64,000 nt of DNA from Mobula hypostoma (Eukaryota), in contig NC_086104.1 in the NCBI RefSeq assembly GCF_963921235.1, positions 135,656,001 through 135,720,000 of the forward strand, in the 5' to 3' direction. This document shows, piece by piece, positions 18,822-63,025 of this stretch. Under the pieces are notes generated by a model. The model saw nothing but the letters and a program-made list of their open reading frames with translations, ran no database searches and was not told the DNA's origin. Both the position numbers and the translations under genes were made by a program. How positions within the stretch are numbered: the first letter of the stretch is position 1; the number at the start of each line of letters is the position of its first letter.

Positions 18822-19136
18822 GGAAGGATGGACCACGACTGGTTGGCGGGGAGAACAGATGCTCTGGCCGTGTGGAAGTCCTGCATGGAGACCAGTGGGG
18901 GACACTTTGTGATGAGTACTTCAGCCTGGAAGATGCAAGCGTGGTCTGCGAACAGCTACAGTGCGGTGCACTCAAAGCAACTCCCAAGAGTGCTTACTTT
19001 GGCGAAGGAAAAGGGCCGGTGTGGAGGGATAACTACCGCTGTCTGGGAAACGAGTCCCGATTAGCCGAATGTCCAGTCCCATCTTGGGGTCAGATTACAT
19101 GTTCACATGGGAATGACGCCAGTGTCATCTGCACTG
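18822..19136 (+). CDS. SRCR domain exon 2
   Basis: CAG acceptor ends 18821; GTGAGT donor at 19137; 315 nt, phase 1-1. Translates GKDGPRLVGGENRCSGRVEVLHGDQWGTLCD...CSHGNDASVICT with 8 Cys. Confidence 0.96.
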
Positions 19137-36417: not shown

Positions 36418-36735
36418 GCCACTTGCAATTAAGGTTGTCCGGAAGTGATGATGCATGTGCTGGAAGACTGGAGATCTATTACAACGGATCCTGGGGAACA
36501 GTTTGTGATGACTCCTGGGATCTGGTTGACGCTAATGTGGTCTGCAAGCAACTGGGTTGTGGATATGCTTTAGAGGAAAAAATAATTATTGATTGCTGTG
36601 GTCAAGGCACTGGACTAGTTTGGTTGAATGAAGTGAATTGTTCTGGTAATGAATCGCATCTCTGGGAATGTCCCTCAGCTCCATGGGGCCAACATGACTG
36701 CAACCATAAAAAAGATGTGACAGTTTCGTGTTCTG
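36418..36735 (+). CDS. SRCR domain exon 4
   Basis: CAG acceptor ends 36417; GTAAG donor at 36736; 318 nt, phase 1-1. Translates [35 protein letters not shown]...[14 protein letters not shown]. Confidence 0.96.
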
Positions 36736-38892: not shown

Positions 38893-39210
38893 AACACAAA
38901 GAAATACGCCTGATGAATGGAGAGCGGCGATGTGAAGGCAGAGTGGAAGTGCGGTACAATGGGACATGGGGAACCGTTTGTTCCGAAACACTGGATAAAA
39001 ATGCTGCGAACTTGATCTGTAAACAGATGAAATGCGGACCCCTGATATCTATTATATATGACTCCGATAAATATGGAAAGGGATATGGTCCAATATGGCT
39101 GGATGAGTTAAAATGTTCTTCGTACGAGAGGACCTTTTGGCAGTGTCGTGCTGATCCATGGGGGAAACACAACTGTGACCACAGGGAGGATGCAGGAGTT
39201 GTATGTGAAG
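38893..39210 (+). CDS. SRCR domain exon 5
   Basis: CAG acceptor ends 38892; GTAAC donor at 39211; 318 nt, phase 1-1. Translates EHKEIRLMNGERRCEGRVEVRYNGTWGTVC...HNCDHREDAGVVCE with 8 Cys. Confidence 0.96.
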
Positions 39211-39297
39211 GTAACAGAGGAAATCCATTACCTGATGATTTTCATTTTAAACGCAGATGATAAAAATAAACAATAATTATTTCTCTCTTGTCATCAG

Positions 39298-39363
39298 AGG
39301 CCAGAATACCGGAGAGTTGCAGCGTAAAATCCCGCGATTCACGAAATGTACCTGGTACTCAAG
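39298..39363 (+). CDS. Inter-domain linker micro-exon of the SRCR gene
   Basis: Pyrimidine tract and CAG ending 39297; GTTAG donor at 39364; 66 nt, open in phase 1-1: EARIPESCSVKSRDSRNVPGTQ. Confidence 0.7.
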
Positions 39364-39460
39364 GTTAGCAGCTGTTCATTGCTACAAGTTACAATATCAG
39401 TGTAAGGTTCGTTTCAAAGTTGTGATTGATACATTATAATTGTTTCCTTATTTCACTGAG

Positions 39461-39772
39461 AATTGCAGTTGCATCTTTTTGGCAGCAATGCCAATTGTTC
39501 AGGAAGGTTGGAAATACTGTTCAATAACACCTAGGGCACTGCATGTGATGATTCTTGGTATATGGCAAATGTCAGTGTTGTCTGCAGGCAATTGGCCTGT
39601 GGCTCTTCCCTTTGGACACAAGCGCCGGATGACATTATTCATAGCATCGGTGATAACTGGCTGGATGAAGTGAAATGCAAAGGGAGTGAATCTCTTTTGT
39701 CCAGATGTCCTTCCTTCGCAACCCGTCAACATGACTGTGGTCACAAGGAAGATTTCTTTGTTGTTTGTTCCG
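39461..39772 (+). pseudogene. SRCR domain exon 6 with in-frame premature stop
   Basis: 312 nt, phase 1-1. Translates ELQLHLFGSNANCSGRLEILFNNT*GTACDDSWY...HDCGHKEDFFVVCS. TAG at 39532-39534 replaces the invariant Trp of the WGTVC motif. The acceptor is a weak GAG (39458-39460); donor GTCGGT at 39773. Confidence 0.9.
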
Positions 39773-39902
39773 GTCGGTATATTTGTGCAAATTTTTTGTT
39801 CTATTCAACTGATTTCTTAAATACGGAATAAGGAACGACTGAAAAATAAAATCATTAAAAAATATGAAGTGGTTGAAATTTGTCCAATAATTGTTTTCAC
39901 AG

Positions 39903-39938
39903 CAACGCCCAGACGTCCCGCTAGTTCCACCGATTCAG
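39903..39938 (+). CDS. Pro/Ser/Thr-rich stalk micro-exon (downstream of the premature stop)
   Basis: TTGTTTTCACAG acceptor; GTATTT donor at 39939; 36 nt, phase 1-1: ATPRRPASSTDS. Confidence 0.65.
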
Positions 39939-40439
39939 GTATTTGATTTTGAGGCTGTTTTTTTATTATTCCGGTTTTAATTTTGAATACTAGCAGTGAT
40001 ATTCCTTTATTACTATTTGTCAATTACAAAGGTCGCCCTGAGTGTTTAAAATATTAGCTGTAATCCTTATTGCTTCATTAAATATTTGAACAAGGTTGTT
40101 ACAAAGTTCTTAAAAAAATAATATATCCAACTCTGGTCAAATGTTTCGATGAGATTAACAGATGTGGTCATTGGGGTCATTGTCCCATTATTAACCATTC
40201 AGAAATGACTGTGAAATGGTGTTCTTATTGAACCTTTGAAGAATTACCATTACACATTTGATAAATGATTGCTGATCTTTGACCAAGTAGTAATAATTGA
40301 TTCATATGATGTGCTGCAAACTAATATTATCTTTGACTTGAAGAAAAATTGCAAGCTGTTAGTTCGTTGATATGTCAACGTGGAAACATTTTCAGCTTTA
40401 GAAGTAAGTATCAATGTCACTTTTTTTGTTGTTTATCAC

Positions 40440-41155
40440 TATTGTAATTCCATGCAAACCCATCACCATATTCCGAAACTGTGAGAAAATCCCTCCCTCT
40501 GCGGCTAGATCCTTGACCTGCCGATCAATAGACTGCAGTCTAACCACTAATACTCCACAAGATTGGGTCCTCTGCCCCTGTCCTGTTCCTTCAACATTCA
40601 AAGTCTGCATGCCCAGATTCCGCTCTCACTCCATCCACAAATCTGTGGATTATATTACCTTAGTTGGCCATATCATGATAACAATGATCAATATACAGGA
40701 AAGAGAAATGCAAGTTAAGTGCCATGGTGTAAATATAACAAACTTTCCACCAATGCGCATCTTCCTGTTTGCATCATCAGTACTGAGCAAGAGGGGGTGA
40801 AAGCTTTGAGTTCGAAGGAGCAAACATCACCAGCGGTTTATCCCGGTCCAATCATGTAGACACGACGTCTCAGAAAGCTCATCAACGCCTCTATTTCCTC
40901 AGGAGATTGTTATAGACTATTTCAAAAGGATCCCCAGAACAACACGATGTATTCTTGACCCTACATTTTATTTTGTTATGATCTTGCCCTCTATTGTTTA
41001 TTACTCGCATTTTCTCTGTAGCTGTTGCAGTTTATTCGGCATTCTATTATTGTATTTGTTTGTTGCCCTCGCCATCTAATGATGCGAGCCGTATGCACAA
41101 TATGAAAAACACAAATTTCAATGACTATATGTCGGTACATGTGACAACAATAAAA
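40440..41155 (+). mobile_element. Rex1/Babar-like LINE fragment
   Basis: FEFEGANITSGLSRSNHVDTTSQKAHQRLYFLRRL near 40805-40910; 3' UTR ending ATGTGACAACAATAAA. Confidence 0.7.
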
Positions 41156-41489
41156 TAATTCCAATTCAAGTTCCATTATGTTAACTTTTTTTTCATTTTT
41201 ATCCGTGCAGGAAGAATTGAATAATTGTTGTAATCTTTCCATCTCCCAATAGTTACTCTGATTTAATTTTCATGGTAAATATGATGTGCGGTCTGACTGT
41301 GTCGCAAGCATATTACCCAAAATTGTTGTTTTGTGCTTCTTTTTGTCGGTTGTCATTGGTAGTGAATCTATATTTTACAGGTATCTTCTGCTTTCACCGC
41401 ATTCCATCCAAAACGGTGAAGAATGTCATTGTTTTCACAATGTACCCTTGCCCACAATACTGCAGTGCAGTACTTATGTGGCAGCAGAG

Positions 41490-43620
41490 AACATAAGGAC
41501 ATAAGAATATAAGAAATAGGAGCAGGAGTAGGTCATCTGGCTCACCGAGCCTGCTCCGCCGTTTAATATGTTTATGGCTGAGTTAGCCATGGACTCACGT
41601 CCACCAACCTGCATTTTCCCCATAACGCTTAATTTCCCTAATATGCAAAATGCTATGAAACCTTGTTTTAAATATATTAACTGCGGTAGCCTCCACTGAT
41701 TCATTTGCAGATAATTCCACAGATTCGCCACTCTCTGGTTGCAGCGTAACCGCTCTATTCTTAAGTTTAATCCCTGTGGCGATGAAGGTTCACATTCTAT
41801 TTGCCTTCTTGATAGTCTGCCGCACCTGCAAATGAACTTTTTGTGATTCATGCACAAGCACTCCCAAGTCGCTCTGCACAGCAGCATGCTGCATTTTTTT
41901 TTTACATTTAAATAATAATCTGCACTTTCATTTTCCCTTCCAAAGTGGATGGCTTTGCTTTTACCAACATTGTATTCCCTCTGCCAGGAAATACCCACTC
42001 GCTCAACCTAGTCATATCTCTCTGCAGACGCTCCGTGTCTTCTGCACAATTTGCTTTTTTGCTCAATTTAGTATCAACAGCAAACACGGCAGTCAGTCCC
42101 CTCTTGCAGTTCGTAATGTATATCGTGAACATTTGCAGGCCCAACACCGACCCTTTGCAACACGGCGCTTATTACTTTTTGCCATTCAGAGTCACACCGA
42201 AGCATTCTAACGCTCCGCGTTTTATTGGTTAAGCAATCCTTTATCCATGCAAAAACTTCGCCACCGACTCTAGGGAACTTACAGAACGCCTGCTGGAAAT
42301 CCAAGTAAGTAGTTCCATCTGTTCGGGTCTATCCACTGCAGCCGTTATATCCTCAACGAACTACAGTAAGTTTGTCAAGCAGGACATGCGTTTGATGAAA
42401 CTATTCTGTGTCTGCCTGATGGATCCAAATCTTTCCAGATGCCTCACTGTTTCTTCTTCAATGATTGCTTCATGCATTTTTAAAACTACAGATGTTCAAC
42501 TAACGGGCCTATAATTGCCTGCCTTTTGCCTACATCCTTCATTGAACAGTGGCGTTACCTTTGCTATCTTCCAATCCGCCGGGACAAGCCGAGGTTCCAT
42601 ATATATGTATTTTAGATTATGAGGACACGCAGTCCTCTTTTATTGTCATTTAGTAATGCAGGCATTAAGAAATGATGCAATGTTCCTCCAGTATGATATC
42701 ACAGAAACATACGAAAACCAAGACTAAAAAAACGGAGAAAAACACATAATTATAACATATAGTTACAACAGTGCAAAGCAATACCTGCAAAGCAATACCG
42801 TAAGTGGATAATGAACAGATCATGGGCACAGTAAAACACAAAGTCTCAAAGTCTCTCGAAAGTCCCATCATCTCACGCAGAGGGTAGAAGGGAGAAGCTC
42901 TCCCTGCCATGAAACGCCAGCGCCACAAACTTGCCGATGCAGCACCCTGGAAGCACCCGACCACAGCCGAATCTTGAGTCCGTCGGAAAATTTCGGGCCT
43001 CCGACCAGCCCTCTGACATCGAGCACCGAGCACAATCTCTGCCTAACGCTGCGACACCGGCACCGGCAACAGGCAGTAGGCAAAGACGAGGATTTGGGGG
43101 CTTCCCCTCAGGAGATTCTCGATCGCACAGTAGCAGAGGCAGTGAAGCAGGCATTTCAGAAGTTTCTCCAAATGTTCCTCTGTGCTTCTAACGTCTGTCC
43201 CCCCAAATTAGGATTCTGTTCGGCCCCTACTTAACAAATATGATATCATTTTGGAGCAGCCGCGTGCGCTGACATCTTCTCCTCCACTCTCTGGTAAATT
43301 ATCGCCTAAGCTTCTACTATAACTTCTGCCATTTCTTTTGCAACTCCAGGATGTATTCCATCAGGAAAAGGGGTCTTGTCTATCTTCAGGCCCACAAGTT
43401 TGCTCAGCACTATACAAGATTTCAATTTGATGCCTTCGTTTTTCAGTTATCCAAGGCAGGCTCTGACTACCCGTACTCTCCTTGCTTTTAACTGGATTAT
43501 ACTTTGTTAAGCACCGTGAGAAATCTCTTTCAAAGTCTTCCACTGTTCCTAAACAGTCCCACCATATAGACTGTGGCTCCAACCTACATTTGCTAAAACC
43601 TCCCTTATCCCATTGTAGAA
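41490..43620 (-). mobile_element. Decayed CR1 LINE, split by retroposon copy 3
   Basis: The 3' tail (AACATAAG)n at 41490-41515; minus-strand MDFQQAF, AVDTKLS and NYRPVS remnants. Confidence 0.8.
42613..43285 (-). mobile_element. Same non-autonomous retroposon, copy 3
   Basis: Reverse complement of the same ends (TTAGATTATGAGGACACGCAGTCCTC ... CATCTTCTCCTCC). Inserted in a minus-strand CR1. Confidence 0.8.
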
Positions 43621-45066
43621 AAAGCACCAACAGAATTTAAATATGAATGCTATTCCGAGCAATACGTTATTTCCAACTTTTTCTCTGAATAACTGGAGAC
43701 CTTACACATATGTGCATTTCAGACCCAGTGATGCATTGGTGAGAGGGTCGGTGGTGATCCTTGAAGTCATCGAGCCCTTTTGCAAAACTTGCTTGGGTCG
43801 GTGATATTTCGAAAAGTTGAAATCCAGGATTGTACAGCAATGCATCGTGGAATGCACCTTGAGTTTGTTTCAACCATGTTTATCCTGAATGGCTGCGAGT
43901 TAATTTTGCACATAGCTTTAAGAGATAATTATGAAATTCGACGACTGATCAAGGACATCTTTTTGCTGCTTAATATAATTTGGAGACAAATAAGATGCGG
44001 CCTTATTACGCAGATAGTGACTGCTAGAACAACTTTAGACCAGCTTTCAACATAGTTTGGAAGCTCAGGTTGCCGTAACCACATGCGTGGAAACAGCATA
44101 CCAACCATCCGATATCTTGCATTAGGGGCAGCCGACAGTCTATCAGATGAGGATAAAGTGGAAACACTTCTGGCCTATATGGTGTGTTTTGAATTGAAGC
44201 TTACTTTTGCAAGTCCATTATGTTGCCCTCTATACTTACAGTTGCAACAACGAATGGTTGTTGTGGGTGGAGGGGAATTGGGATAGTTATGAAAAATAGT
44301 AAGTCATGGGAAACTTGGATAGGTGCACATTCTTTCGAGTATAAATTCCTCCTTTACAAAAATAAAGTATTTTTTTCTCTCAAAATGTCCTTGGATGTTT
44401 TATGTGCGTTTGTTTCTTATTACAATGGAAATGTCGGCAGTGCAGCAGATTCGGCAATTGCGCTCGAGAATGTGCACGTGCCAGCTAAATATTTCATTGT
44501 GGTAGTATTGAACTCCATTCGTCCCGTCGTAGTTTTTGTCAAGACTTGAACTTAGAACATAGCTATGCTTCATTATCTGCATTCCGCCTAGCCTGAGAAA
44601 GTGTACTCTCGATTCGACTGACTCTGAAGACTCGTGGTATTCATTTTATTCTTAATTGTTTTTTTCAGCCGCAGCGTAGGCTTCATTTTCCATTTGAGCG
44701 TTTAGTTAACGGTCCTGTTTGGCCTAGCATTTATCGTATTCTTTTCCCTTGAAACACTGCTCGCATTTAAGTCGGTGAACTATAGACTTGGTTCAGTGTC
44801 TCTCACTTCGCACTTGGGCCATATCCGCACCAGCTGACAGGAAATTGCAGCCACTTTTGTTGTTTCTAACGTCATATCAAACCAATTTATTCATCTCTGG
44901 TGCCATCCACGAAATATTTATCATCTGTCTGTACTTCATATTCTACGGGTAATTTGGAATTATGCAGAATTCTCTGAGCTTAAATTTAGCTATTACCCTT
45001 TGGAAATGTGAGGACCTAAAAATTGTAGGACCAGTTTTAAATTTATCTGCAAAATTTTCATTTAAG

Positions 45067-45106
45067 TGTACGTTGCTGTCTGCATTACCCTTGGGATTAT
45101 CTTTGT
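45067..45106 (+). pseudogene. 5' remnant of the transmembrane exon, interrupted by an LTR
   Basis: Reads VYVAVCITLGIIFV, the start of an SRCR-receptor-type TM helix, in the expected order between the stalk and the YEEI exon. The LTR terminus begins at 45107. The 5' boundary (TTTAAG acceptor at 45066) is uncertain. Confidence 0.6.
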
Positions 45107-45286
45107 TGTTGTGTTATTTATACGTACCGTGGGTTACTAATAATGAAATATCTTCTTTAAGAATAGAACATTTATTTAACAACAGCCACACGTGTCTTAC
45201 AATACCATGTTTTTTCGATATTTCTATAATTCCCGCGCATGCTCAGAACTCTTTCCGATCACGTTCTTATACGTTATATCACCACA
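45107..45286 (-). mobile_element. 3' LTR of a Gypsy-like element (180 bp)
   Basis: On the minus strand a polypurine tract AAGGAAAGGAAAA precedes TGTGGTGATAT. The other end is ATAACACAACA (9/11 inverted match). Internal AATAAA. Confidence 0.75.
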
Positions 45287-46822
45287 TTTTCCTTTCCTTA
45301 AAAAAAGAATAAAACAATTAGCAACATTGACCTCAGCAAATACATGATTTAGCATGCTTCTATCAGTTTTTCTAGGGGTTTATGACATGAGTAGACCTTC
45401 TAAGTGGTTCACACAGTTCTTGTATTTCATTATTATTTCCATGTTTTGTTTCGTCCAAATCAGTTAACTGAAACTTTGAAGTTGGCTCTTTCTGGAGGTC
45501 TTTGCGACCTCTTCGGAGCACTGCTCCTTCTTCTGTTTGGACCATGTATGATCAAGGTTGCACTTCTTCAAGTATGTAGCTTTTTGTGTCCATGTGTACA
45601 TTTTGTCTTGTATCCTAACTTCATCACTTTGGTGTAGTTCAGGTAATGGACGAGAACATCTGTCAAAGTATGTTTTCTGCTTTAGTGTATGTTCATCTTT
45701 CCATCTTTTCACTTGCTCACCTCCATCTGTTCTCAGAAGGCTCTCATCTATTGGCAGATTGGATCTCAAGCGGCATCCCATCAAGAGCTGAGCAGGTGAA
45801 AATCCACATTCAAGTATAGTATTGCGATAGGCTAACAAAGCTTTATAAAATCATCTCCACTATCGTTTGCTTTGTGCATCCTTTTCTTGATAATTCCTAC
45901 ACACGTCTCCACTAATCCATTGGACTGAGGGAAAATGGGTTAGTTGTTGTATGAACAATGCCCCATTTATAGGAAAAACGTCTCATGCATTCACCATTGA
46001 ATTGTAGACCATTGTCTGTGAAATCGTCATCAGGTACAGCATGTGTGGAAAAAAAATGATTTCATGCCTGTAATTACATTCTCTGCGGTTGTTCCGCTCA
46101 GATAACACAGTTCAGGATACAACGAGTAGTAATCTCTTATTAATAGATAATCTTTGTTGTCAGTTACAAAAACATCGACACCTACCTTCTGATAACGTTC
46201 CGAGGGATATGATGTGGATGCAGCGGCTCTTTAGGATTGCTATGTTGGTATTTAAGGCATATTTAACAAAAGGGCACCAATTCTGCAATTTCATGATCCA
46301 TCCTGGGCCAAAATATCACTTCCTGCGTCCTTCTCTTACATTTTGCGGTACCTAGGTGCTCTTCATGAATTTTCTCAAGCATTTCTTTTCGGAGACTTTT
46401 AGGAATCGCAATTCTGCTACCTTTGTACAACTTCCCATCCACAACAGAAAGTTGTGATCTGTGGTTCCAATATTCTTGTACTTCTGAGGTACAATCATGG
46501 TTCTTATCTGGCCATCCATCCATCACCACTTGTGTCACCTGACTGAGAATTTTGTCTTTCTCTGTCTCGAGACGCAGCAGTTCCAACTTTTCGGGAGCAA
46601 AAGGTACAGTCTGTATGATCATATCAATAAATGGCTGAACACCAACAGCGTCCCTGTGACTGTGTTTTGTTGTTGGATTCAGAGCTCTGGAAAGTGTGTC
46701 AGCCGTGTTTTTTGAATTCTCCAGGTCTATATGACACATTCAATACATATCTTTGCAATTTGATTATGATTCGCTGAATTCGCAAAGGACAGTCGCTTCA
46801 AGGTTTGCGAAACAATGCAGTG
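45287..46822 (-). mobile_element. Ty3/Gypsy LTR retrotransposon remnant (RNase H end, integrase zinc finger and core), 5'-truncated
   Basis: LFRKP.SDCPLRIQR..IKLQRY, ADTLSRA, IHEEHLGTAKCKRRTQEVIFWP, TDNGLQF, PQSNGLVE, LAYRNT..CGFSPAQLLMG. Confidence 0.9.
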
Positions 46823-46851
46823 TAAGGGCGAAACAACTCGTACTTAAACAG

Positions 46852-46960
46852 GTGCAGTGTTAAAAGGCGGAGATTCACCCAATACCTTTTACATAGCAAT
46901 TTATGAAGAGATTGAGACTATTCCTCACGTCAAAAAAGTTGGATAATACAGGAGATTCAG
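46852..46960 (+). pseudogene. Cytoplasmic-tail exon with YEEI motif and a +1 frameshift
   Basis: CAG acceptor ends 46851; GTGTGT donor at 46961; 109 nt (3n+1). Translates GAVLKGGDSPNTFYIAIYEEIETIPHVKKVG*. Removing one A from the A6 run at 46932-46937 restores KKLDNTGDS and a phase-1 end. Confidence 0.75.
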
Positions 46961-47099
46961 GTGTGTTTTACAAATTGTCATTGACTTCTTAAGCGATATA
47001 CACAAGGTATTAGAGGTCAACAAATACCACGAAAACTTAACAAAACATACCTCCACGATGAAATTAATATTCAGAGATAGCTAGTTATAGAATGTCCCA

Positions 47100-48240
47100 T
47101 AATAACAAGTGTGAGTGGGACTAGAGTGAGGAGTTCAACTATATCTCCTAGAGTTTTTGGCGAGGAGATGTGGAGGGTGCGCGTAGAATTTTTTCTTTTT
47201 TTTTTGAAACGTTCTGCCTTTGTTTATTGCACAGTTAGAGCAGTGATTAGGCTAGACAGGATAGTGCAAGTCTCCTGTCGCGGGCTGGGGGAAGGCAGAG
47301 AGGCATCCATTCTCCCTGTAACCGCAACTGTAAGAGGTACAGCTTACTACAGAGCGTGCTAAGAAATTGGCGATCGAATCAGATAATTATTCAGAAAGCT
47401 GAAGGGTTGATCGTTCGGGCTATCATGGAGGTAATTACAACTAAAGTGTAGGACACAATCAACAAGCCTCGGGAGAACAGCAGTGCAGGGTAGCCCTGTT
47501 GCCGTCCCCACGAGCAAAAGCAGTACCGCTTCGGGTACTGTTGGGGGATGTCCTTGCAGAAGAAAGCCAAAATGGTCAGGTCTGTTTCATTGAGCCTAGC
47601 TTGTCAGTCAGAATGGAAAGGAAGAGAAGAAGTGAGCTGCAGCGATAGGCGACTCATTGTTTAGGGAAACAGAAATTATGGTGTGTCTACGAGAATGAAA
47701 TTACGGTGAAGTATGTGCGTCAGAGCTGCCAGGGTCAAGGATACCAGGGATCATGTCCATAGCACTCTTAAGTGGGAGAGTCAACAGACAGACATCATGT
47801 TGTACTACAGCACCTATCATATTGGTAGAAAGGGCAATGTACTCCAACAAAGTGAGCTCAGGGAGTTGCATGCTAGGTTGAAGGTTACGATCTCTATGAT
47901 TTTAATCACCGGATTGCTGCCCGCGGAACATTCAAGGAGCGTTTGCTTTTGCTGCACGAAGGGGCGGGCGCAGCTGTTGGTGGTTGTGGTTTATACCATA
48001 GTGGCAGGGGAATAGGAACAGGGGCACACGTATAGGTCGTGGAGGGGTTGCACGTAGAAGATGTGAAGCTAGCATGCAAATTCAGTTAATCAAAAGTTTG
48101 AGCTTGGTGTGACTAATATTCTCAGTCGCATATACTTAATTGCAAGGATCATTGCAGGAAAGGCGTAAGAGCTTTGATCATGGGTAAGCATGTGGAACGG
48201 TGACATTTTAGCCATCAGTGAGATGTGGTTGCAGCACCAT
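47100..48240 (+). mobile_element. Decayed CR1 5' region (ORF1 remnant)
   Basis: IGDSL.R, ARVKD..D.VH.TLKWE esterase-like remnants. Confidence 0.6.
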
Positions 48241-51200
48241 ATGGTCATATAAATGTACAGCAGAGTATCAGCCGATCGGCCAGGCTAGTTCGTGCCGAAC
48301 CGTTTAAACTGTCTTTTCCCATCTATCTGCACCGAGCCATCTACCTCTATAACCGTACCAGCCACGTACACATCCAATCTTACCTTAAACGCTGAAATCC
48401 AGCACTTCCCAGACAGATCACCCCATGCTTTCAGGATCCTCTGAGTGAAGACTTTTCCCTTCATATTCGCCTTGTATATTTTACCTTCCACACTTAGCCC
48501 ATGCCCTCTAGTTGAAGTCCCAACCTATGTGGAAAGGCCTGCTTGCATTTACGCTCTCGATACCCCCATAATATTGTACAAGTCTATTAAAAGTCCACTC
48601 AATAATCCACATTCCAAGGAACAACGTTCTCACCTATCTATTTTTTTCCTTGCAACGCAGGGCCCGCGGTCCCGCCAATATCCTTGTAAATCTTCTCATA
48701 ACCCATTCAGTCTTATATACATATTTCCTGCAGTTTGATCACAACTGCACACAATGCTTCAATATAGGTCTCAAAGTCGTATGCTCCCTCTATTTATCTG
48801 CCCAGTACTGTACGCAATGCTTTGATTTATGACGGCCAATGTAGCAAAAACTATATTTCCGACCGTATCCACCGACGCCACTTTCAATGAATGTTGTACC
48901 TATATTCCCAGTTGTCTTTATTCTACAACAGTCTATTATGCTCCACCGTTCACTGTGTAAGATATGCCCTAGTTGTTCCTACCGAAGTTCAACACCTCGC
49001 ACGTCTGCATTTGAATTCATATAACCATATAAGAGTTACAGCAAGGAAACAGGCCACTTCGGCCCATCTAGTCCATGACGAACTCATACCCTCACCTAGT
49101 CCCACCGACCTGCACTAGGCTCACAACCCTCCATTCCTTTCTTGTCCATATAATTGTCCAATTTAACTTTAAACGTCAACATCGAACCTGCCTCAACCAC
49201 TTCTGCTGGAAGTTCGTTCCACACAGCTCCCACTTTCTGAGTAAAGAAGTTCCTCCTCATGTTACCACTAAACTTTTGTCATCTGACTTTCTCTCTCAAC
49301 TCATGTCCTCTTGTTTGAATCTCCCACACTCTCAATGGAAAAAAGCCGATTCACGTTAATTCTATCTATCCCCCTCATAATTTTAAATACCTCTAACAAG
49401 TCCCCCCTCAACCTTCTACGCTCCAAAGAATAAAGACCCAACTTGTTCAACCTTCTCTGTAACATAGATGATGAAACCCAGGTAACATTCTAGTAAATCT
49501 TCCCTGTACTCTCTCTAATTTGTTGACATTTTCCTATAATTCGGTGACGAAAACTGTACACAATACTCGAAATTTGGCCTCACCAATGCCTTGTACAATT
49601 TCAACAATACATCCCAACTCCCATACTCAATGCTCTGCTTTATAAAGGCCAGCATACCAAAAGCTTTCTTCACCACTCTATCCACATGAGATTCCACCTT
49701 CGGGGAACTATGCACCAATATTCCTTGATCCCTCTGTTCTACTGCACTGTTCAATGCCCTACCATTTACCATGTATGTCCTATTTTGTTCAGTCCTACCA
49801 AAATGTAGCACCTAATATTTATCAGCATTTAACTCCATCTGCCATCTTTCAGCCCACCCTTCTAACTGGCCTAAATCTCTCTGCAAGCTTTGAAAACCTA
49901 CTTTATTATCCACAACTCCACCTAACTTAGTATCATCTGCATACTTACTCATCCAATTTACCACCCCATCATCCACATCATTAATGTATATGCTAATTAA
50001 CAATGGACACAGTACAGATCCCGGAGACACACCACTAGTCACTGGCCTCAAATCTGACAAACAGTTATCCACCACCACTGTATAGCGTCTCCCATCCAGC
50101 CACGGCTGAATCCATTTTACTAGTTTAATATTAATACATAACGATTCAACCTTCCTAACTAACCTTCCATGTGGGACCTCGTCAAAGGCCTTACTGAAGT
50201 CCATAAAGACAATATCCACCGCTTTACCCTCGTCAACTTTCCTACCAACCTCTTCAAAAAATTCAATAAGATTTGTCAAACAAGACCTGCCACGTGCAAA
50301 TCCATGTTGACCGTTCCTAAAAAAGACCCTGTCTATCCAGATATTTATATATACCAACTCTAACAATACTTTCTATCAATTTACCGACCACTGACGTCAA
50401 ACGCACAGGCCGATAATTGCTAGATTTAGTCTTAGAACCCATTTTAAACAATGGAACAACATGACCAATATGCCAGTCCTCCGGCACTATCCCCGTTTCT
50501 AATGACATTTGAAATATTTCTGTCAGAGCCGCTGCTATTTCCACACTAACTTCCCTCAAGGTCCTAGGGAATATCCTGTCAGAACCCGGAGACTTATCCA
50601 CCTTTATATTCCTTAAAAGCTCCAGTACTTACTCTTCTTTAATTATCAGAGAATATCCTTCTCTTTAGTTAATATCGAAGAAAAGATATTGTTCAGAATC
50701 TCCCCCATCTCTTTTGGCTCCACACATACCGGTCCACTCTGATTCTCCAAGGCTCCAATTATATCCCTCACTATCCTTTTACAGTTAATATAACTGTAGA
50801 AAACCATGGGATTTATTTTCACCTTACTTGCCAAAGCAACCTTATAACTTCTTTTAGTTTTTTTTTTCTAATTTCTTTCTTAAGATTCATTTACATTCTT
50901 TGTATTCCTCGGGCACCTCATTTGAACCTCATTTGAACACTAATGCGCGCCAAGTTTCAGATATCCCTCGAAAAACATGGCTCCCTCAAACTTTGAACCT
51001 TTCCTTTCAACCTAACAGGAATGTAAAGATTCTGTACTCTCAAATTTTCATCTTTAAATGACCTCCATTTCTCTTTTACATTCTTCCCATAAAACAAATT
51101 GTCCCAGTCCATTCTTTCTAAATCCTTTCGCATCTCTTCAAAGATAGCCTTTCTCCGATCAAAAATATCAACCCTGGTTCCAGTCCTATCCTTCTCCATA

Positions 51201-54200
51201 ATTACAATGAAACTAATGGCATTGTGATCACTGGACCCGAAGTGCTCCCCAAAACAAACCTCCGTCACCTGACCTATTTCATTCCCTAACAGGAGATCCA
51301 ATACTGCCCCTTCTCTAGTTGACACCTCTATGTATTGCTGCAAAAACCTATCCTGCACACATTTTAGAAACTCCAAACCATTCATCTGTTTTACAGTATT
51401 GGCTTCCCAGTCTAGGTGTGGAAAATTAAAATCTCCCACAATCACAGCCTTGTGCTTACTACAAATATCCGCTATCTCCTTACAAATTTGCTCCTCAAAT
51501 TCTCGCTCCCCATCTGGTGGTCTATAATACACTCCGATACGAGTTACCACACCTTTCCCATTACTCAATTCCACCCAAATAGCCTCTCTAGACGAGCCCT
51601 CTTATCTATCCGGCCAGGCACCTATATATTATTTTCTCTGACAAGCAATGCAACACCTCCCCCTCTTGTCCATTACACCTGATGCAATTAAATCCAGGAA
51701 TATTTAGTTTCCAATCACACCCCTCCTGTAACCATGTTTCACTAATAGCTACCACATCATACTTCCACGTATCAATCCATGTTTTAAGCTCATCCACCTT
51801 TCTTGTGATGCTCCTAGCATTAAAATAAATGCATTTAAGAAATGTTTCAACACTTACTCTCTGTTTATCACTATCGGTGCAAACAACTTACTATTTTCTT
51901 TTTCTTCCGTCTTTCCTACATCTGTTCCTACACTCTGGTTCCCCTCCCCCCTCGTATCTAGTTTAAATCCACCGGAACCTCCTTAGAAAACCTACCTGCA
52001 AGAATATGTGTCCCCCTATCCGAGCCACGTCCGAACCTATCCATATTTTTCCTTACAAATCAGGGCCTCCAATCCCGCCAATATCCTTGTAAATCTTCTC
52101 TGTACCATTCAATCTTATTTAGATGTTTCCTGCAGGTAGTTGAGCACAACTGCACACAGTATTTCAATTTAGGTCTCAACGAACTCTTCTGCACCTTCTT
52201 CATATCTGCTCATATACTGTATACAATACTTTGATTTATGACGGCCAATGTGCCAAAAGCTCTCTTTGCGACCGGCACCACCTGCGACGCCACTTTAAAT
52301 GAAATTTGTACCTGTATTCCCAGCTGCCCTTGTTCTACAGCACTCCTTTATGTTCTATTGATCACTGTGTAAGATATGCCCTGGTTGTTCCTACCGAATT
52401 TCAACACCTCTCTCGTCTGCATTTGAATTCAATATGCGATTTTACATCCTATTTGTCCAGCTTTGCCAGATCCCGCTGGAATTTCTGATAGCTTTCCGCG
52501 CTGCTGCTGCACTCCAGACTTATTGTCATCCGCAAATTTGCTGATGAAGTTAGCCACATTTTCATCCAGGTAACAGAAAGAGATGACAAATAAGAATGGG
52601 TCAAGCACCGATCCCTGAGTCAATCTACTCGTAACGGACCTCCAGTCAGACAGCCAACAAACTTCGGCCACGCTGGCTTCTCCCACAAAACCAATGTCCA
52701 AATCAGTTTACCACCTTCTCTTAAATGCCCTGCGGCTGAACCATCTTGATCAAACTCCCATGCGGGACATTGCCAAATACCTTTATAATTTATTTACTGT
52801 CTTGTCTTCATTGAATTTCCTGGGAACTTCTTCGAATTCTCTTTAAGGCAGGTTAGACTTGTCTTACCACTAACAAAGCCATGAAGTCTATCTCTAATCT
52901 GTTTATGCCTATGCTCATATATCAGGTCCCTTAGAATACCTTCCAATAACTTTCTCACTATGTATGTGAAGCTCACTGGTCTGTTATGTCCTCGTTTATT
53001 TTCAGAGCATTTCATAGCAGTGGATGAGCAGTAGCTATCTTCCAAGCTGGCACCTCACCTGTTTGTTCAAATATCTCTCCTGGAGCTCCTGCAATTTTTT
53101 AACTTGTCTCCCATAGAGTCTGCGGGAATACCTTTTCAGGCTCTAGGGTGAATCCACACTAATATGCCCCAAAATAGCAAATGACCCCTCCTTTGTAATC
53201 TGTATATGTTCCACGAAATCGATTCTGATTTTCTTCACTTTTATAGACTCTGTGTTCGTCTCCTTTGTAAATACAGACGATAAAACTAAATTGACAGCTC
53301 CACGATCTCTTTTGGTTCTATGCATGGATTGCGAATCTTATCTTCCAGAGGGCCAATTATGTCCCTTGCAATTATTTATTTATTTATTTCTCTTAACATA
53401 TCCGTTAAATCCATTAAGATGATCTTCCAACTTGTCTGCTTGGGGAAACTTCATGCCTTCTTTTAGCACTTTTTTTTATTATTCAGTGTTTTCTGCCATT
53501 TATTACACACCATAAGTACTTTGTTGGTATCTCCTTTTTCCTGTGAAATACCTCTTTTATTTCCTAATATCCCTCAAAAATGGCCTAAATATCCCTTGAA
53601 AGGGTAGGTTCCCTAGTCCGTTTATTCTGCCACGCAGAAACGAACTTTGTTTTCTCAAAACTTCACTTTTGAAGTCTTTCTAGTGACCAAGTACATCTTT
53701 GCCAGAAAATAGCCTTTCCCAGTCCATACTGGCCAGGTCCTTTCTGATAAACAATCTTTCATCGCTACCCTGCTTCTTTCTCTGATCAAAGATCATGGAT
53801 CTCACACTCTATCACTGGGACTTCTAAGTACTGATGAAGGAAAATTTCCTCTACTCAACTGACAATCTCTGTCTCTTCTAGTCCTTTAAAGTATTGGAAT
53901 CCTGGTCAATCGGTGGAGAGTTAATATCACCTACTCAAACAAGCTGAGGTTTTTGGCGGCATTCTCCAATGTCTGTACAATTTCGTTCCTGTACGTCCAG
54001 TCGGGTAGACTATAACATAGTCTCATTAACGTCGTCATACATGACATGATTTTCAATTGCATCAATAACGCCTCACAAGACTAGCTGTCCAATCTGTCAT
54101 GGCAGCACTACCGTGACATTTTCTCTGACTAGTAAAGCCAACCCTCCTCTTCTAATCATTCCCGCTCTGACCCATTTGAAGCTATGGAATCAGCATGTCC

Positions 54201-54400
54201 CCTTCAACTAAGTCTTACGAATGGCTACAATACCGTAATACCATGTGCAAATCTATGGCTTGAGCTAATCTGCCTTTTCTACGATATTACTTGCATTGAA
54301 ATACGTGTAATTCAGAGCAATAGTCACACTATGCTCACCCTTTTGTTCCCTGACATTGTCGAAGGCTTAACCATATCTGCTTTATTTTAATTATGTCTGC
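48240..54400 (-). mobile_element. Decayed CR1 (outer), with a nested CR1 at 49021-52020
   Basis: 3' tail at about 48240; minus-strand RT and EN remnants resume at 52020-54400 (SKFADD, RPVSFTY). Confidence 0.75.
49021..52020 (-). mobile_element. Nested CR1 LINE, ORF2 (EN plus RT)
   Basis: [61 protein letters not shown]. Confidence 0.93.
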
Positions 54401-54559
54401 CGATCAATCCCAACCGCTGTTCGAAACACTAAATTGCGCGAGTCGATACCTGAGGCCAACCAGAGTGAACATCGTCTTCTCACGCTTCCTATCCACAATT
54501 TGCCACTGTTCTTAAAAAAAAAAAGTAGGGACAGGACTGGCAGCTGAAGTTCCAGGGTT

Positions 54560-57010
54560 CCGTTGCCTGGAACGTAATTAAGCGTGAGCGAGAACTCTCA
54601 GGGACAATGTTGGGACTGCAGAGGACGTCTACTGGCGTGTTATGGGTGGAACTGTGGAATATAAAAGGAATGACGACTTGTAGGACAATTTTACAGACTC
54701 CCAACAGTCTACAGGATTTAGAGGGGCACATTTCTGAGAAATCACAGGCTGTTGCATGAAACATAAGGATGATGACAGGTGATTTATAGTTTCCACATAT
54801 TGACTGGGATTCCCGTACTGTAGAGGGGGGATGGGATAGAGTTTATTAAATATGTTCATGGCAGCTTCCCTAACCAGTACGTTGAAGTCCAGCTAGAAAG
54901 AACATGATACTAAATCTCCTGTTAAGGAATAAGGCAGGGCAAGCAGCAGAAGTATGTGCCAGGGAAAACTTTGAAATTTTGCATCTAGAGCTCATTTGCC
55001 ACTAGTTTCAAGACCTTTTTGGAGAAGGATAGATTTGGTCCTCCAGATAAGGTTCTAAATTGAAGAATGACCAAATTTGATGGTATCAGAAAGGATCGGG
55101 CAAGTGTGGACTGCGACAAGCTGTTTTCTGGCAAAGGTGCATTTGGTAAGAGGAAAGCCTTCAGAAGTTAAATGCTGACGAGTATAGCGTTTGTATATTG
55201 CTGTCAGAATAAAAGGCGGAAATAACAAGTTCAGGAAACTTTGTTTTCGAGAGGAATAGAGGCCCTGGTTAGATCGAAAGATGCATAACGTGAATAATTA
55301 GGATGGAGCCAGTGAGTTACTCAAAATGTTTTAGAAACATGAGAGAGCACACAAGAACGAAATCAGGAAGTTGAAAGCAGGCTCGAGGTTGCTCAGGTAG
55401 AAAACTTGAAAGTGAATCCAAAGACTTCTACAGGTATGCTAAGGGCAAAGGCATAGCAAGGGACAAAATATATCCTCAGAAAGATCAGAGTGTTCACATG
55501 GAACCGAGAGAGATGGTGGAGGTCTTAAATGATGCTGTTTTGCAGCAGTATTTACTCCCGACATAGAACGATTCTGTAGATGTTAAGCTAAGCCGACTTG
55601 AGGTCTTACATTACATAACAGCAAGCATTTTGTGCCTTGAGTTAACTGAGAGACAATAAATTCCTCATCCCTGAGACATCTTGGCATTCAAAATGAGGTG
55701 GAAATTTTGAATAAAAATTGACTTTATGGAAAATTCATGGACTGGTCTCTGACCAGCAGTTTGCCACATAGGTCGTTGCCAGGTGCATTGCTGGTGTCAC
55801 ATTATTGACGATCTCGAAGATAGTTTGGTGAAATGGGTTGGCAAACCTGCGGATTTCAGCAAATTTAGAGTGTAGTGAACAGCGACGAAAACTTTCAAAG
55901 CTTGTAGTCGTCCCTTGACCAGATGGAAAACTGGGCTATTAATTTTATATGGAATTTTATACAGACATATGTAAGGTGTTGCACTTTTATAGGACTTACA
56001 CAGTGAGTGGTGGATGATTGAGCAGTGCAGTAGGGCAGAGTGATCCAAGAAAACAGATGAGTTATTCTTTGAAAGAGGCGTCACATGTAGATTAGGTCGA
56101 AAAGAAAGCTTATGGCACACTGAGCTTCATAAGTCAAAGTACCATGTACAGGCGATGAGATAACGTGTTGAATTTGCGTAAGTAGTTATTGAGGCCTAAT
56201 TTGGGGTATTATGTGCAGCTTTTTTCACCTACCTTCACGAAACATTTCAAAGGGATTGAAAGAGTACAAAAATACTAAAATGTTGTAGGACTTGAGATAT
56301 AGGAAAAGGTTAAACAAGTTAGTTCTTCATTTCCTGGAGTGTTTAAGAATTAGGAGAGATTTGACAGAGATATGAAAGTATGGAGATGTGTCACTAGCAA
56401 GGAAGGTGTAAATAATTCCCTCCCTCCGCTGGCGTGCAAGTCCCTCTTTGGCAATGTGCAGCACTTACCGAGCGGACTGCACCCACTACCGCTCCCTTAT
56501 ACACCGATGGGAGTAACAAGAAGTCATGGGAGCAGGTGGTGGATGGTCGTATAAACAGTCATTGCATATCACAAGCCCTGGTTATATTCTGCCACTGATG
56601 CCAGGCAGAAAATCCCTGAATAGTATTGATAATAGTTCGGGTGAACTTTTTGTATAAAGACACAGTGCAGAAAAAGGCAAAGGCAAAAAACATCAGAAGG
56701 AGGAAAATTGCCAAGAACAATCGTGGTAATGGATAAGACCATGATCGCCAACCCACTCGACACGGTAGCAAATGATGATAATGATGATGAGGAGAATGAT
56801 GAAACTAAATTAAGACCAGTGTGTAGGGTAAATGCAATCAGGTTGTTTCAATTGAGGCTGTTTAGGACGAGAACTAGAGTAATTGTGTCAGGAGTGAAAG
56901 GTGAAATGTTTAAGGAAAACATTAAAATAATTTCTTCACTCAGAATTTGGTGAGTGTGTGGTATAAGCTGACAAGGAAAGTGGTAGACGCGGATTCGATT
57001 TCTTCCTCTA
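54560..57010 (+). mobile_element. Heavily decayed CR1 LINE
   Basis: EN and RT remnants (GDL.FP.IDWD, RPNLGYYVQLF). Interrupted at about 56392-56800. Confidence 0.7.
56392..56800 (+). mobile_element. RTE-related SINE-like insertion
   Basis: GAAAAAGGCAAAGGCAAA (decayed GAAGGCAATGGCAA of RTE 3' ends) and a (TGA)n-like tail at 56772-56800. Interrupts CR1. Confidence 0.5.
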
Positions 57011-57095
57011 GCAGACATTTATTTTGCTATACTGAGGGCTATTATCCATTCAAAGAAATTAAAACGATGCACAGAAAACAGATGCTGACGTCCAG

Positions 57096-57203
57096 ATTCT
57101 GGTTCAATCGATTCCATCAATCAAATCGACTATTACACCAGCGACCCGTTTAACGGCTCCGTTTATGGACGGGATTGTAGTGAAGGAAACACCTGTGTTC
57201 CCG
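57096..57203 (+). CDS. Second cytoplasmic-tail exon (Tyr-containing), downstream of the lesions
   Basis: TCCAG acceptor with a weak pyrimidine tract; GTTGGT donor at 57204; 108 nt, phase 1-1: DSGSIDSINQIDYYTSDPFNGSVYGRDCSEGNTCVP. Acidic, Ser/Tyr-rich sequence in a non-repetitive island. Confidence 0.6.
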
Positions 57204-57636
57204 GTTGGTACATGTTTTCTTTCGGTTTTTATTTTCTACCTCTACCTCATGTTGGTGTCAAATATAAACTAACAAAGAAAGTTGTACAGGCATGCACGAC
57301 GTAAATTGATCTGAGATCTGATACTTTTCTGAGCGATTTGCTTTAATTGATGTGTGTGACAAAAAAAAAACGCTTCTGTAGCCAGGTGTGTAATTGAACG
57401 AAACGTTATTTCATTGTTCGTTGCATCTTGCTCGTTTTCATGTGGAGATTTTGAGGAATAATTAGTACATCGTGTTCGTGCGCAATACATTGCTCATAGT
57501 CAGAAAACAAATAAACATCCATCCTTCATCGAAATGCGCATCACACAAAGAACAAAAACAATATCTCTCATTCAGCAGGGTGTGCTGTTCAACATGTTGT
57601 TTCGGAGATAGTGATTTCATTCATTCTTCCTTCTAA

Positions 57637-57756
57637 ATCTGGTTCTCGGCGCTGAAAGTAAAACCATTGGCTCTCCTGATGCTCCGGTCCTGATGGCCGG
57701 CAGTACTGACAATCTGCTGATGCTCAGAGATTCCCAAGATGATCACAAAAATTAAG
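57637..57756 (+). pseudogene. Putative decayed third cytoplasmic exon
   Basis: Good pyrimidine tract, but it ends TTCTAA rather than TTCTAG. The phase-1 frame reads DLVLGAESKTIGSPDAPVLMAGSTDNLLMLRDSQDDHKN*; GTAAAT at 57757. The assignment is inferred from position and composition. Confidence 0.4.
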
Positions 57757-61510: not shown

Positions 61511-62688
61511 TACACTCTTTTTCACATCCGTAGGAACCAAAATTCTGGGTAACGGATTATTGACCGGCCTATGATTTCGACAGCACAATCTTTATTGGTA
61601 TTTCTTAAAAATACATGTCCTGGGAAAGTGGTTCAGGAGCAGTGCTGTTCTCAAGCAGACAAAGTTGTCATCCTGGAGTCTTATCCGAAACACGTGACTC
61701 TACAATTTTGTATCGTCCACGCCGGTTTCTCTGTATACACTATATTTCCAGTGACTGAAACTACTTCCAACCATTTCTCCCCAGCATCTGGTCCTCCTAC
61801 GCAAATGAGATGCTTAAATCCGTGCTGCTGATTAAATCACTGCCGTTGATTTTCAATAGTTTGTCCTCGCGGTGCAAATTTCTCTCTCGCGTATTGAACT
61901 TAATGTTTTTTTTGTTTTAAATGTCATGTCTATTTAGTTTGAGAAGACTAATCCTTTCAATGAGAAACTTTCAATTTCGTTAATGAAATAAAAAGGCCGA
62001 GTAATATTCCAAATGTTATTAAGTTTCAATCCGCTTTATTTGGCATAATATATCAACTTTGTTTTCATTCTCAGGTAGATTAATATAAAGTCCAAGATTC
62101 CATATTCGATTGCCAATCTTGAAGACAATGGAAATGTTCTGACTTAGATCGAGAAGCCACCCTTTCTTCTGTCAAGAAAGAGGCGCATGCAGATCTTCAT
62201 CTTGCTGTCATCTCTTGCACAATTACCAAATGCAGAAATATTGACTAATTTTGTGTTTATTTGGTTTGACTCCTGTCCTGTTACTTACAGAAAACATCTT
62301 TGTTTTGTTCAATGTAAATAAGTTTGAAGAAATGAAAAAAAAAAGGAAAATCCCTCGTAAAGAAAGATCATGGCTATTTCTATCGATTAAATATTAAAAA
62401 CAATTACTCTGTATTACCCTTTTCCAGTATTCCTAACACTTGTTAGAGATATACCGGGTGTTCAGATGAATGGATTAACGGTTATATTGCGCTTTATTTT
62501 GTTATGGATGTTGGCAGTTGGTCTTTTATTTTTGCATTGCTCTGCGACATTTCAAGCACATTAAATAAATATATCATCTTATGCATGTGTTCACATTTTG
62601 TCCGAAAACAAGCCATATCAGGGGCAGTGAAATACTACTGCGCTGTTTCATCAGGAATTCTAATGTGAACAAGAGATATATACTATTA

Positions 62689-63025
62689 TCATAGACGTTC
62701 TTATGATTCTCCAAATGATCCAGTAAGTTGACATCTGGCACAATAGATTAAAAACAAAAAACAAAACAAAACAAAAAAGTAGCTATCAACAGATTAAGAG
62801 AAAAATAAGGGAATTCAAAAAGCCTGAGAGCACTCTTCAGAGACACGAGAGAAGCGGGGGATGGGGGGTGGAGTCATAGACGTTCTTATGATTCTCCAAA
62901 TGTCCCGGCAAGTTGGCATCTGGCAGAGTAGATTCAAAACGAAAAATAAAGTTGCCAGCAACAGATTAAGGGAAAAATAGGGGAATTCAAAGAGTCTGAA
63001 AATGCTCTTCAGTGTCATGAGAGAG
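62689..63025 (+). repeat. Tandem duplication of about 150-185 bp
   Basis: TCATAGACGTTCTTATGATTCTCCAAATG...GGGAATTCAAA...CTCTTCAG occurs at 62689 and again at 62874. Confidence 0.9.

What the first reader, a model, noticed from the sequence alone, without database searches (positions are those of the whole stretch)
38893..57756. Polarised decay of an SRCR receptor: intact ectodomain, destroyed membrane anchor and tail (candidate secreted or decoy form)
Seen in sequence: five SRCR exons and the linker are open with canonical splice sites over 38 kb. All four lesions lie at or after SRCR6: TAG at 39532, an LTR in the TM exon at 45107, a +1 frameshift at 46932-46937 and an AA acceptor at 57635. 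Inference: uniform pseudogene decay should also hit the ~1.6 kb of upstream coding sequence, so selection may be keeping a soluble multi-SRCR protein derived from a CD163/WC1-like signalling receptor.
Basis: partly seen in the sequence, partly recalled or inferred. Interest (0 to 1): 0.8.

Follow-up and report, generated by a model that had tools for sequence, protein, structure and literature searches.

The report
Shark SRCR receptor turned secreted protein
A WC1/SCART-like immune receptor gene of a cartilaginous fish has lost its last SRCR domain, membrane anchor and signalling tail, and its RNA skips those dead exons, so the message encodes a membrane-less multi-SRCR protein.

Summary
Five SRCR exons and the linker are open with canonical phase-1 splice sites. 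By homology to ray, sawshark and zebra shark genes, all four reported lesions are real: TAG 39532-34, a Gypsy fragment from about 45107, an extra A at 46932-37, and an AG>AA acceptor at 57635-36. I found further lesions in the same exons.

The new evidence is RNA. Spliced contigs from four public runs of two related species join SRCR5 to the linker. They then join the linker (39363) to a 36-nt PST mini-exon at 39903-39938, skipping SRCR6 altogether. In one run the contig continues directly into 62075, the ancestral last exon. The reading frame there ends after four codons (G-R-L-I-stop).

Inside the window the message therefore encodes SRCR1-5, linker and PST stalk with no membrane anchor, 563 codons. 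No contig covers the TM remnant.

Disabling lesions number 4-7 in about 780 nt of skipped exons and none in 1695 nt of used exons (P about 0.01 to 0.0003).

Limits:
- The 5' end and signal peptide lie outside the window.
- dN/dS does not separate used exons from SRCR6.
- The ectodomain has evolved fast at the protein level.

A transcribed, recently dead gene is therefore not excluded. The scan has not reported this before on other DNA.

The parts
1313..1624 (+). SRCR1 exon (second SRCR domain of the family architecture), used in mRNA
   Evidence: PF00530 E 2.6e-23. It has AG/GT sites, phase 1-1 and 8 Cys. Runs X1-X4 hold 1.00 of its words.
18822..19136 (+). SRCR2 exon; carries GRVEVLHGDQW, a match to the VEVLxxxxW bacteria-binding motif of DMBT1
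   Evidence: PF00530 E 2.7e-31; splice sites; the motif is described in PMC5906529.
20435..20749 (+). SRCR3 exon (6-Cys type, as in sawshark and ray)
36418..36735 (+). SRCR4 exon
38893..39210 (+). SRCR5 exon, last SRCR domain of the mRNA
   Evidence: PF00530 E 1.8e-32. The spliced joint 39210|GT..AG|39298 is present in X1, X2, X3 and X5.
39298..39363 (+). Interdomain (ID) linker exon, 22 codons
   Evidence: Joints on both sides in all four runs. The ray has the same exon 78 bp after its SRCR5.
39461..39772 (+). SRCR6 pseudoexon: TAG at 39532-34, weak donor gtcggt; skipped in mRNA
   Evidence: The joint 39363 to 39903 skips it in all four runs. Only low-depth unspliced contigs cover it.
39903..39938 (+). 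PST stalk mini-exon (ATPRRPASSTDS), used in mRNA
   Evidence: Joint in four runs. It is orthologous to the zebra shark mini-exon about 146 bp after SRCR6, with the same tttcacag| acceptor and CAG|gtattt donor.
45052..45106 (+). Remnant of the stalk/TM exon (..VAVCITLGIIF), with in-frame TAA at 45064-66 and its 3' half missing; not in RNA
   Evidence: Depth is 0 in all runs for 44931-45130.
45107..46800 (-). Gypsy fragment (LTR-side end, integrase, RNase H end) replacing the rest of the TM exon and most of the next intron
   Evidence: Integrase_H2C2 E 1.3e-9; ORFs; no second LTR. The limits are approximate.
46852..46960 (+). Tail exon A pseudoexon (..FYIAIYEEIETIP..), +1 frameshift in A6 at 46932-37
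   Evidence: 59-61% identity to the sawshark tail; family alignment; the ray exon has the same phase.
57096..57203 (+). Tail exon B (SGSIDSINQIDYYTSD..), intact but skipped in the X1 contig
   Evidence: The donor G|gttggt is the same as in the ray.
57637..57756 (+). Tail exon C pseudoexon: acceptor AG>AA (57635-36), 12-nt deletion of the acidic motif, TAA at 57753-55
62075..62581 (+). Terminal exon: G-R-L-I-stop, then 3' UTR; ATTAAA at 62560
   Evidence: The X1 contig continues from 39941 into 62078-62107 with 0 mismatches. The region is collinear with the ray last exon and 3' UTR (E 3e-12). For the polyA signal and contig length arithmetic.

Best explanation
This is a gene of the chondrichthyan WC1/SCART-like family. 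The ancestral architecture is tandem single-exon group-B SRCR domains, an ID linker exon, a last SRCR, a PST mini-exon, a stalk/TM exon, tail exons with a YEEI motif, and a last exon. Here the gene has been converted in the germline into a gene for a membrane-less, presumably secreted, multi-SRCR protein.

Shown:
- SRCR6, the TM exon and tail exons A and C carry disabling lesions.
- The spliced RNA joins SRCR5 to the linker and then to the PST mini-exon in four runs. In one run it goes on to the ancestral last exon.
- Every exon is phase 1-1, so skipping keeps the frame.
- The ORF stops four codons into the last exon, so the message should escape nonsense-mediated decay.
- The linker-to-PST joint that skips SRCR6 is seen in a second species, about 3-4% diverged in coding sequence.

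Inferred:
- The upstream, unseen part supplies a signal peptide and one more SRCR domain. The length of the X3 contig fits this.
- The product is secreted and acts as a soluble pattern-recognition or scavenger protein, or as a decoy for ligands of membrane-bound paralogs.
- Selection against ORF-breaking mutations maintains the used exons.
For: - Spliced joints 39210>39298 and 39363>39903 occur in X1, X2, X3 (organism A) and X5 (organism B) at depth 12-253. SRCR6 bins have depth 0-7, and depth is zero on the TM remnant.
- The X1 contig runs from the PST exon into 62078-62107 exactly.
- The ORF of 563 codons has no hydrophobic anchor.
- The SRCR1 exon is held completely by X1-X4.
- The X3 contig has about 1743 nt upstream of SRCR5. 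That is enough for SRCR1-4, one more SRCR domain, a leader and a 5' UTR.
- The ancestral exon order is established from ray L001 and zebra shark L002 and from sawshark protein P0054.
- Lesion polarity: 4-7 lesions in 780 nt skipped against 0 in 1695 nt used gives P 0.01-0.0003. P(0) is 2e-4 to 2e-6 at the lesion density of the skipped exons.
- All Cys of SRCR1-5 are retained.
Against: - The 5' end and signal peptide are outside the window and were not seen.
- Pairwise dN/dS to the ray is 0.30 for SRCR1-5 and 0.25-0.28 for the dead SRCR6, so there is no contrast.
- On the window lineage the retained domains show 26 nonsynonymous to 21 synonymous changes at codons identical in ray and zebra shark. 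The ray lineage shows 5:22 (p=0.003). This means relaxed or diversifying evolution.
- The PST-to-last-exon junction is shown directly only in X1.
- The runs are labelled RNA only by guess. The spliced joints and near-empty introns are what argue for RNA.
- The frameshift lies in a homopolymer and was not read-checked.
Confidence: 0.62

Rival explanations
1. It is a transcribed but dying gene. The promoter and strong splice sites still work, and the spliceosome skips broken exons. The product has no function, and the upstream ORF is intact only because the decay is recent.
For: The dead SRCR6 exon has the same dN/dS as the retained exons, which suggests a recent loss. The window lineage has an excess of nonsynonymous changes in SRCR1 and SRCR3. 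The 5' end was not seen.
Against: There are zero ORF-breaking lesions in 1695 nt against 4-7 in 780 nt. The skipped exons have had time to collect stops, indels, a splice-site loss and a retroelement. The same spliced form occurs in a second species about 3-4% diverged. The spliced contigs have high depth. The stop lies in the last exon.
Confidence: 0.28
2. The gene still makes a membrane receptor. The soluble message is one isoform, and a TM-bearing isoform uses exons that I did not recognise.
For: Only four small runs were examined, and contigs drop rare variants. Tail exon B is intact.
Against: The only TM-homologous exon is truncated, has an in-frame stop and has zero coverage. Tail exons A and C are broken. 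The other hydrophobic hit, at 41026-41076, ends in two stops and has no splice sites. No alternative joints leave the linker or the PST exon.
Confidence: 0.06
3. The lesions are assembly errors, and the locus is an ordinary intact receptor.
For: The +1 frameshift lies in an A6 homopolymer, a typical long-read error site.
Against: The TAG is confirmed by an independent contig. The Gypsy fragment, the 12-nt deletion, the AA acceptor and the missing half of the TM exon are not error types. The RNA itself skips these exons.
Confidence: 0.03

Closest known systems
WC1 / CD163c-alpha (SCART) group-B SRCR co-receptors (Herzig et al. 2010, PMC2906472)
   Same: Tandem SRCR domains with one exon each; a separate interdomain exon; a TM exon and several tail exons. 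The relic tail carries Y-E-E-I, which fits the Y-(Q/E)-(D/C/E)-(I/L) motif shared by WC1 and CD163c-alpha.
   Different: In the expressed message the last SRCR, the TM and the whole tail are absent, so it cannot signal as a co-receptor. Orthology to mammalian WC1/SCART was not tested by phylogeny.
Intact chondrichthyan relatives annotated 'DMBT1-like': Pristiophorus japonicus P0054, Amblyraja radiata P0262 (L001), Stegostoma tigrinum P0255 (L002)
   Same: Same domain order and exon phases, with 54-76% amino-acid identity per SRCR domain to the sawshark protein P0054 (45-73% to the ray, 45-63% to the zebra shark). The linker, PST mini-exon, tail exons and last exon are homologous.
   Different: The relatives keep an open SRCR6, a TM with a conserved acidic residue, the YEEI exon and a (D/N)YDDV or DDHDD motif. 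The window gene has these only as wreckage.
Soluble group-B SRCR proteins: CD5L/Sp-alpha, SSC5D, DMBT1
   Same: It would work like these: a secreted chain of SRCR domains with a short PST-rich end. SRCR2 has the VEVLxxxxW motif mapped as the bacteria-binding site of DMBT1.
   Different: The origin is independent, because its nearest relatives are membrane receptors. There are no CUB or ZP domains, and relics of the TM and tail exons are still in its introns.
Soluble CD163, released from the membrane form by proteolytic cleavage (mentioned in PMC2906472)
   Same: A soluble ectodomain of a CD163-family receptor.
   Different: Here solubility is fixed in the genome by exon death and skipping, not produced by a protease from a membrane form.

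Membership tests
SRCR superfamily, group B | Domains match the SRCR profile (PF00530) | tested here: met
   Six exons score E 6.9e-18 to 4.3e-33.
SRCR superfamily, group B | Each SRCR domain is encoded by one exon, with 6-8 cysteines | tested here: met
   Single phase 1-1 exons. There are 8 Cys in SRCR1, 2, 5 and 6, 10 in SRCR4 and 6 in SRCR3; sawshark and ray have the same counts except 9 in SRCR4.
WC1 / CD163c-alpha (SCART)-type membrane co-receptor | Interdomain (ID) exon between SRCR domains | tested here: met
   39298-39363 is spliced into the RNA. The ID exon is described in PMC2906472.
WC1 / CD163c-alpha (SCART)-type membrane co-receptor | Transmembrane segment in the product | tested here: not met
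   The TM exon is a truncated remnant with zero RNA coverage, and the ORF has no hydrophobic anchor.
WC1 / CD163c-alpha (SCART)-type membrane co-receptor | Cytoplasmic Y-(Q/E)-(D/C/E)-(I/L) motif in the product | tested here: not met
   YEEI exists only in the frameshifted pseudoexon 46852-46960, which the X1 contig skips.
WC1 / CD163c-alpha (SCART)-type membrane co-receptor | Phylogenetic grouping of its SRCR domains with the mammalian WC1/SCART domain types | not tested
   No tree with mammalian sequences was built.
Soluble group-B SRCR proteins (works-like class: CD5L, SSC5D) | SRCR domains only, no membrane anchor | tested here: met
   The 563-codon ORF is SRCR1-5, linker, PST and GRLI-stop.
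Soluble group-B SRCR proteins (works-like class: CD5L, SSC5D) | Signal peptide | not testable with these tools
   The 5' exons lie upstream of the window, and no convincing leader exists in 1-1312.
DMBT1 (the name database annotators give the relatives) | CUB and zona pellucida domains after the SRCR array | tested here: not met
   The mRNA ends at the exon starting 62075, directly after the PST exon. The relatives have a TM and tail instead.

The most novel reading that the evidence does not exclude
This is a germline receptor-to-opsonin conversion caught with its wreckage still in place. A WC1/SCART-type co-receptor of a cartilaginous fish became a secreted SRCR protein through the death of five internal exons, whose symmetric phases let the spliceosome skip them cleanly. 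The soluble product has been kept across species. It acts on the same ligands as the intact membrane paralogs elsewhere in the genome, either as a decoy or as an opsonin partner. This would also place the WC1/SCART signalling tail at the base of the jawed vertebrates.
Probability: 0.3. Interest if true: 0.7.

Novelty: new variant of a known kind. Interest (0 to 1): 0.55.

Why it matters
The locus shows, exon by exon, how a signalling immune receptor can become a secreted recognition protein. All exons share phase 1-1, so the dead ones can be skipped without breaking the frame, and the ancestral last exon supplies the stop and the polyA site. It documents relatives of the WC1/SCART family, tail motif included, in cartilaginous fishes. 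It also offers a testable model for the origin of soluble SRCR proteins such as CD5L and SSC5D. For annotators it is a warning: exon-homology gene models would call this a pseudogene or build a false receptor.

Tried and rejected
- A phmmer search with SRCR5 against 1.84 billion representatives, and a word search with P0054, were both ranked by the number of SRCR repeats and gave no close ortholog. Useful relatives were found only by tblastn of C-termini.
- My first reading of the 0.79 word share of X1 as 'SRCR5 + linker + SRCR6 spliced' was wrong. It comes from low-depth unspliced contigs.
- Pairwise NG86 dN/dS and a three-taxon count gave no contrast between used exons and SRCR6.
- A leader exon in 1-1312 was not found.
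- An alternative TM at 41026-41076 was rejected: two stops, no splice sites.
- 'GDSDF' upstream of tail exon C was considered as a relic of DYDDV and rejected. The ray exon boundary puts the motif inside exon C, where 12 nt are missing.
- A search for an LTR pair around the Gypsy fragment found none.
- Rfam gave no hits.
- Contig lengths alone cannot exclude that X2, X3 or X5 include tail exon B. That would add 36 residues and still no anchor.
Full report
**1. What is in the sequence**

tblastn with the window's own SRCR domains finds six SRCR exons on the + strand, and all match PF00530. Refined limits are 1313-1624, 18822-19136, 20435-20749, 36418-36735, 38893-39210 and 39461-39772, with a 66-nt linker exon at 39298-39363. 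Every one has an AG acceptor and a GT donor, and its length is a multiple of three in phase 1-1. The sixth carries TAG at 39532-34 in place of the Trp of WGTVC. Its donor is gtcggt, a weak site, where the ray has gtatgt and the zebra shark gtaagg.

**2. Relatives and the ancestral gene plan**

A C-terminal tblastn of the proteins returned picked out P0054. This is a 1003-aa protein of the sawshark Pristiophorus japonicus (name). Its plan is seven SRCR domains, a linker before the last one, a PST stalk, a TM and a tail with AIYEEIE and GDYDDV.

The same tail occurs in Amblyraja radiata (P0262) and Stegostoma tigrinum (P0255). Genomic loci L001 and L002 give the exon plan:
- SRCR exons
- an ID exon 78 bp after SRCR5
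- SRCR6
- in the zebra shark, a 39-nt PST mini-exon about 146 bp further on
- a stalk/TM exon
- tail exons A, B and C
- a short last exon

All of these are phase 1.

Herzig et al. (PMC2906472) describe the ID exon. They also describe a Y-(Q/E)-(D/C/E)-(I/L) tail motif as shared by WC1 and CD163c-alpha. The family here fits both. Database annotators call these proteins 'DMBT1-like', but they have a TM and tail and no CUB or ZP domains.

**3. The lesions**

- **TM exon.** Only ..VAVCITLGIIF is recognisable, at 45072-45104. The homologous frame has TAA at 45064-66. A short alignment to the ray suggests that the acceptor is lost as well. From about 45107 to 46800 the minus strand carries a Gypsy RNase H end and integrase without a second LTR. 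The conserved acidic TM residue, the basic stop-transfer stretch and the donor are gone.
- **Tail exon A** (46852-46960). It has an intact acceptor but one A too many in 46932-37. The +1 frame restores ..KK[LM]D.. of the family.
- **Tail exon B** (57096-57203). It is intact, and its intron start gttggt matches that of the ray.
- **Tail exon C** (57637-57756). It has AA where the ray has AG (tctaa|ATCT against cctag|ATCT). It lacks the 12 nt that encode the acidic motif and has TAA as its last codon.

**4. RNA**

Runs X1-X4 (organism A) and X5-X7 (organism B) hold the SRCR5-SRCR6 stretch. I laid X1, X2, X3 and X5 on 39131-45130. All four show two GT..AG joints:
- 39210 to 39298, which is SRCR5 to the linker
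- 39363 to 39903, which is the linker to a 36-nt exon at 39903-39938

The second joint skips SRCR6. Joint depths are 12-253. The SRCR6 bins have depth 0-7. In X1 these bins are covered only by unspliced low-depth contigs that also run through the flanking introns and carry the TAG unchanged. Introns are nearly empty in X2 and X3, so these small runs are transcriptomes, not genomic DNA. No contig lies on 44931-45130.

All four contigs leave the genome at 39941. In X1 the next 255 letters begin with a 30-mer found once in the window, at 62078-62107, directly after an acceptor at 62073-74. The region 62041-62605 is collinear with the ray's last exon and 3' UTR (E 3e-12), so this is the ancestral terminal exon.

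ATTAAA lies at 62560. By length arithmetic the X2 contig would end at about 62581. The lengths of the X2, X3 and X5 contigs cannot exclude inclusion of tail exon B.

The SRCR1 exon, 38 kb upstream, is held completely by X1-X4 and partly by organism B. The X3 contig has about 1743 nt 5' of SRCR5. That is enough for SRCR1-4, one more SRCR domain as in P0054, and a leader.

**5. The encoded product**

Joining the RNA-supported exons gives 563 codons. They comprise five SRCR domains, the linker, ATPRRPASSTDS, and then G-R-L-I-stop in the last exon. There is no hydrophobic anchor and no tail. Because the stop is in the last exon, the message should escape nonsense-mediated decay. All cysteines of SRCR1-5 are kept. 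SRCR2 has GRVEVLHGDQW, a match to the VEVLxxxxW bacteria-binding motif of DMBT1 (PMC5906529). That match is a lead, not a test.

**6. Is it maintained by selection?**

For:
- There are no ORF-breaking lesions in 1695 nt of used exons, against 4-7 in about 780 nt of skipped exons. The chance that all fall in the skipped part is 0.01 to 0.0003.
- At the lesion density of the skipped exons, 9-13 lesions would be expected in the used part.
- The same splice pattern occurs in a second species. Its word shares imply about 3-4% coding divergence.

Against, or neutral:
- NG86 dN/dS to the ray is 0.30 for SRCR1-5 pooled and 0.25-0.28 for SRCR6.
- At codons identical in ray and zebra shark, the window lineage shows 21 synonymous to 26 nonsynonymous changes in SRCR1, 3, 4 and 5, and 7:8 in SRCR6. 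The ray lineage shows 22:5 (p=0.003).

SRCR6 therefore died recently relative to these deep comparisons. The ectodomain has evolved fast, either by diversifying selection, as is common in recognition receptors, or under relaxed constraint. These tests cannot decide between the two.

**7. Verdict**

- The soluble-form interpretation is supported by RNA, with one correction. The message does not stop at the TAG. It skips SRCR6 and, in X1, the TM and tail exons, and it ends in the ancestral last exon.
- I put about 0.9 on the statement that the locus makes a TM-less message.
- I put about 0.6 on the statement that this is a functional secreted protein kept by selection.
- The main rival is a transcribed, recently dead gene (about 0.28).
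- Earlier notes of this scan agree on the Gypsy fragment (s1-144498). They also mention a WC1/SCART-like receptor 1.4 Mb away in the same genome (s1-143159, not checked here), which would be a candidate membrane partner.
- A search of the held literature found no description of this family or of such a conversion in cartilaginous fishes.

Noticed in passing
window 42612-43240, 26594-27220, 37441-38061: There are three copies of an interspersed repeat of about 630 bp, 71-74% identical to one another. In the RNA contigs of both species this element reaches summed depths of thousands to tens of thousands, so it is a very abundantly transcribed repeat family. Its type was not determined, and Rfam gave no hit.
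   Followed up: partly
window 41331-41930 (weak copy 60584-60726): A second repeat shows high RNA depth (400-7700) in all four runs. It overlaps a minus-strand ORF, 41474-41998, with no Pfam hit.
   Followed up: partly
L001 (Amblyraja radiata) 1155-11298 and 75780-99707: Two tandem copies of the receptor gene have been fused by the annotation into one 1400-aa model (P0262). The copies differ by 1-7% at synonymous sites, and dN/dS is about 1 in SRCR2, 4 and 5. This points to recent duplication or gene conversion.
   Followed up: partly
L002 (Stegostoma tigrinum) around 16-20 kb and 66-70 kb: Near-identical tandem duplicates lie about 50 kb apart. The annotated model P0255 reads through the donor of tail exon A into the intron, although tail exons B and C are present downstream at 70875-71496.
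   Followed up: partly
window 20435-20749: The SRCR3 domain has only 6 cysteines, with WHRLHD in place of WGTVCD. The same two cysteines are missing in sawshark and ray, so this is a family trait and not a lesion.
   Followed up: yes
window 3254-6045, 33415-34761, 49515-51574 (-), 59144-59993: These are LINE fragments with a CR1/L2-like reverse transcriptase and endonuclease (RVT_1 and Exo_endo_phos_2 for the copy at 49.8-51.6 kb). They fill much of the introns.
   Followed up: partly
window 62987-63643: A purine-rich, low-complexity tract lies just downstream of the gene's 3' UTR and gives long S/P/L-rich and E/R/G-rich ORFs on both strands.
   Followed up: no
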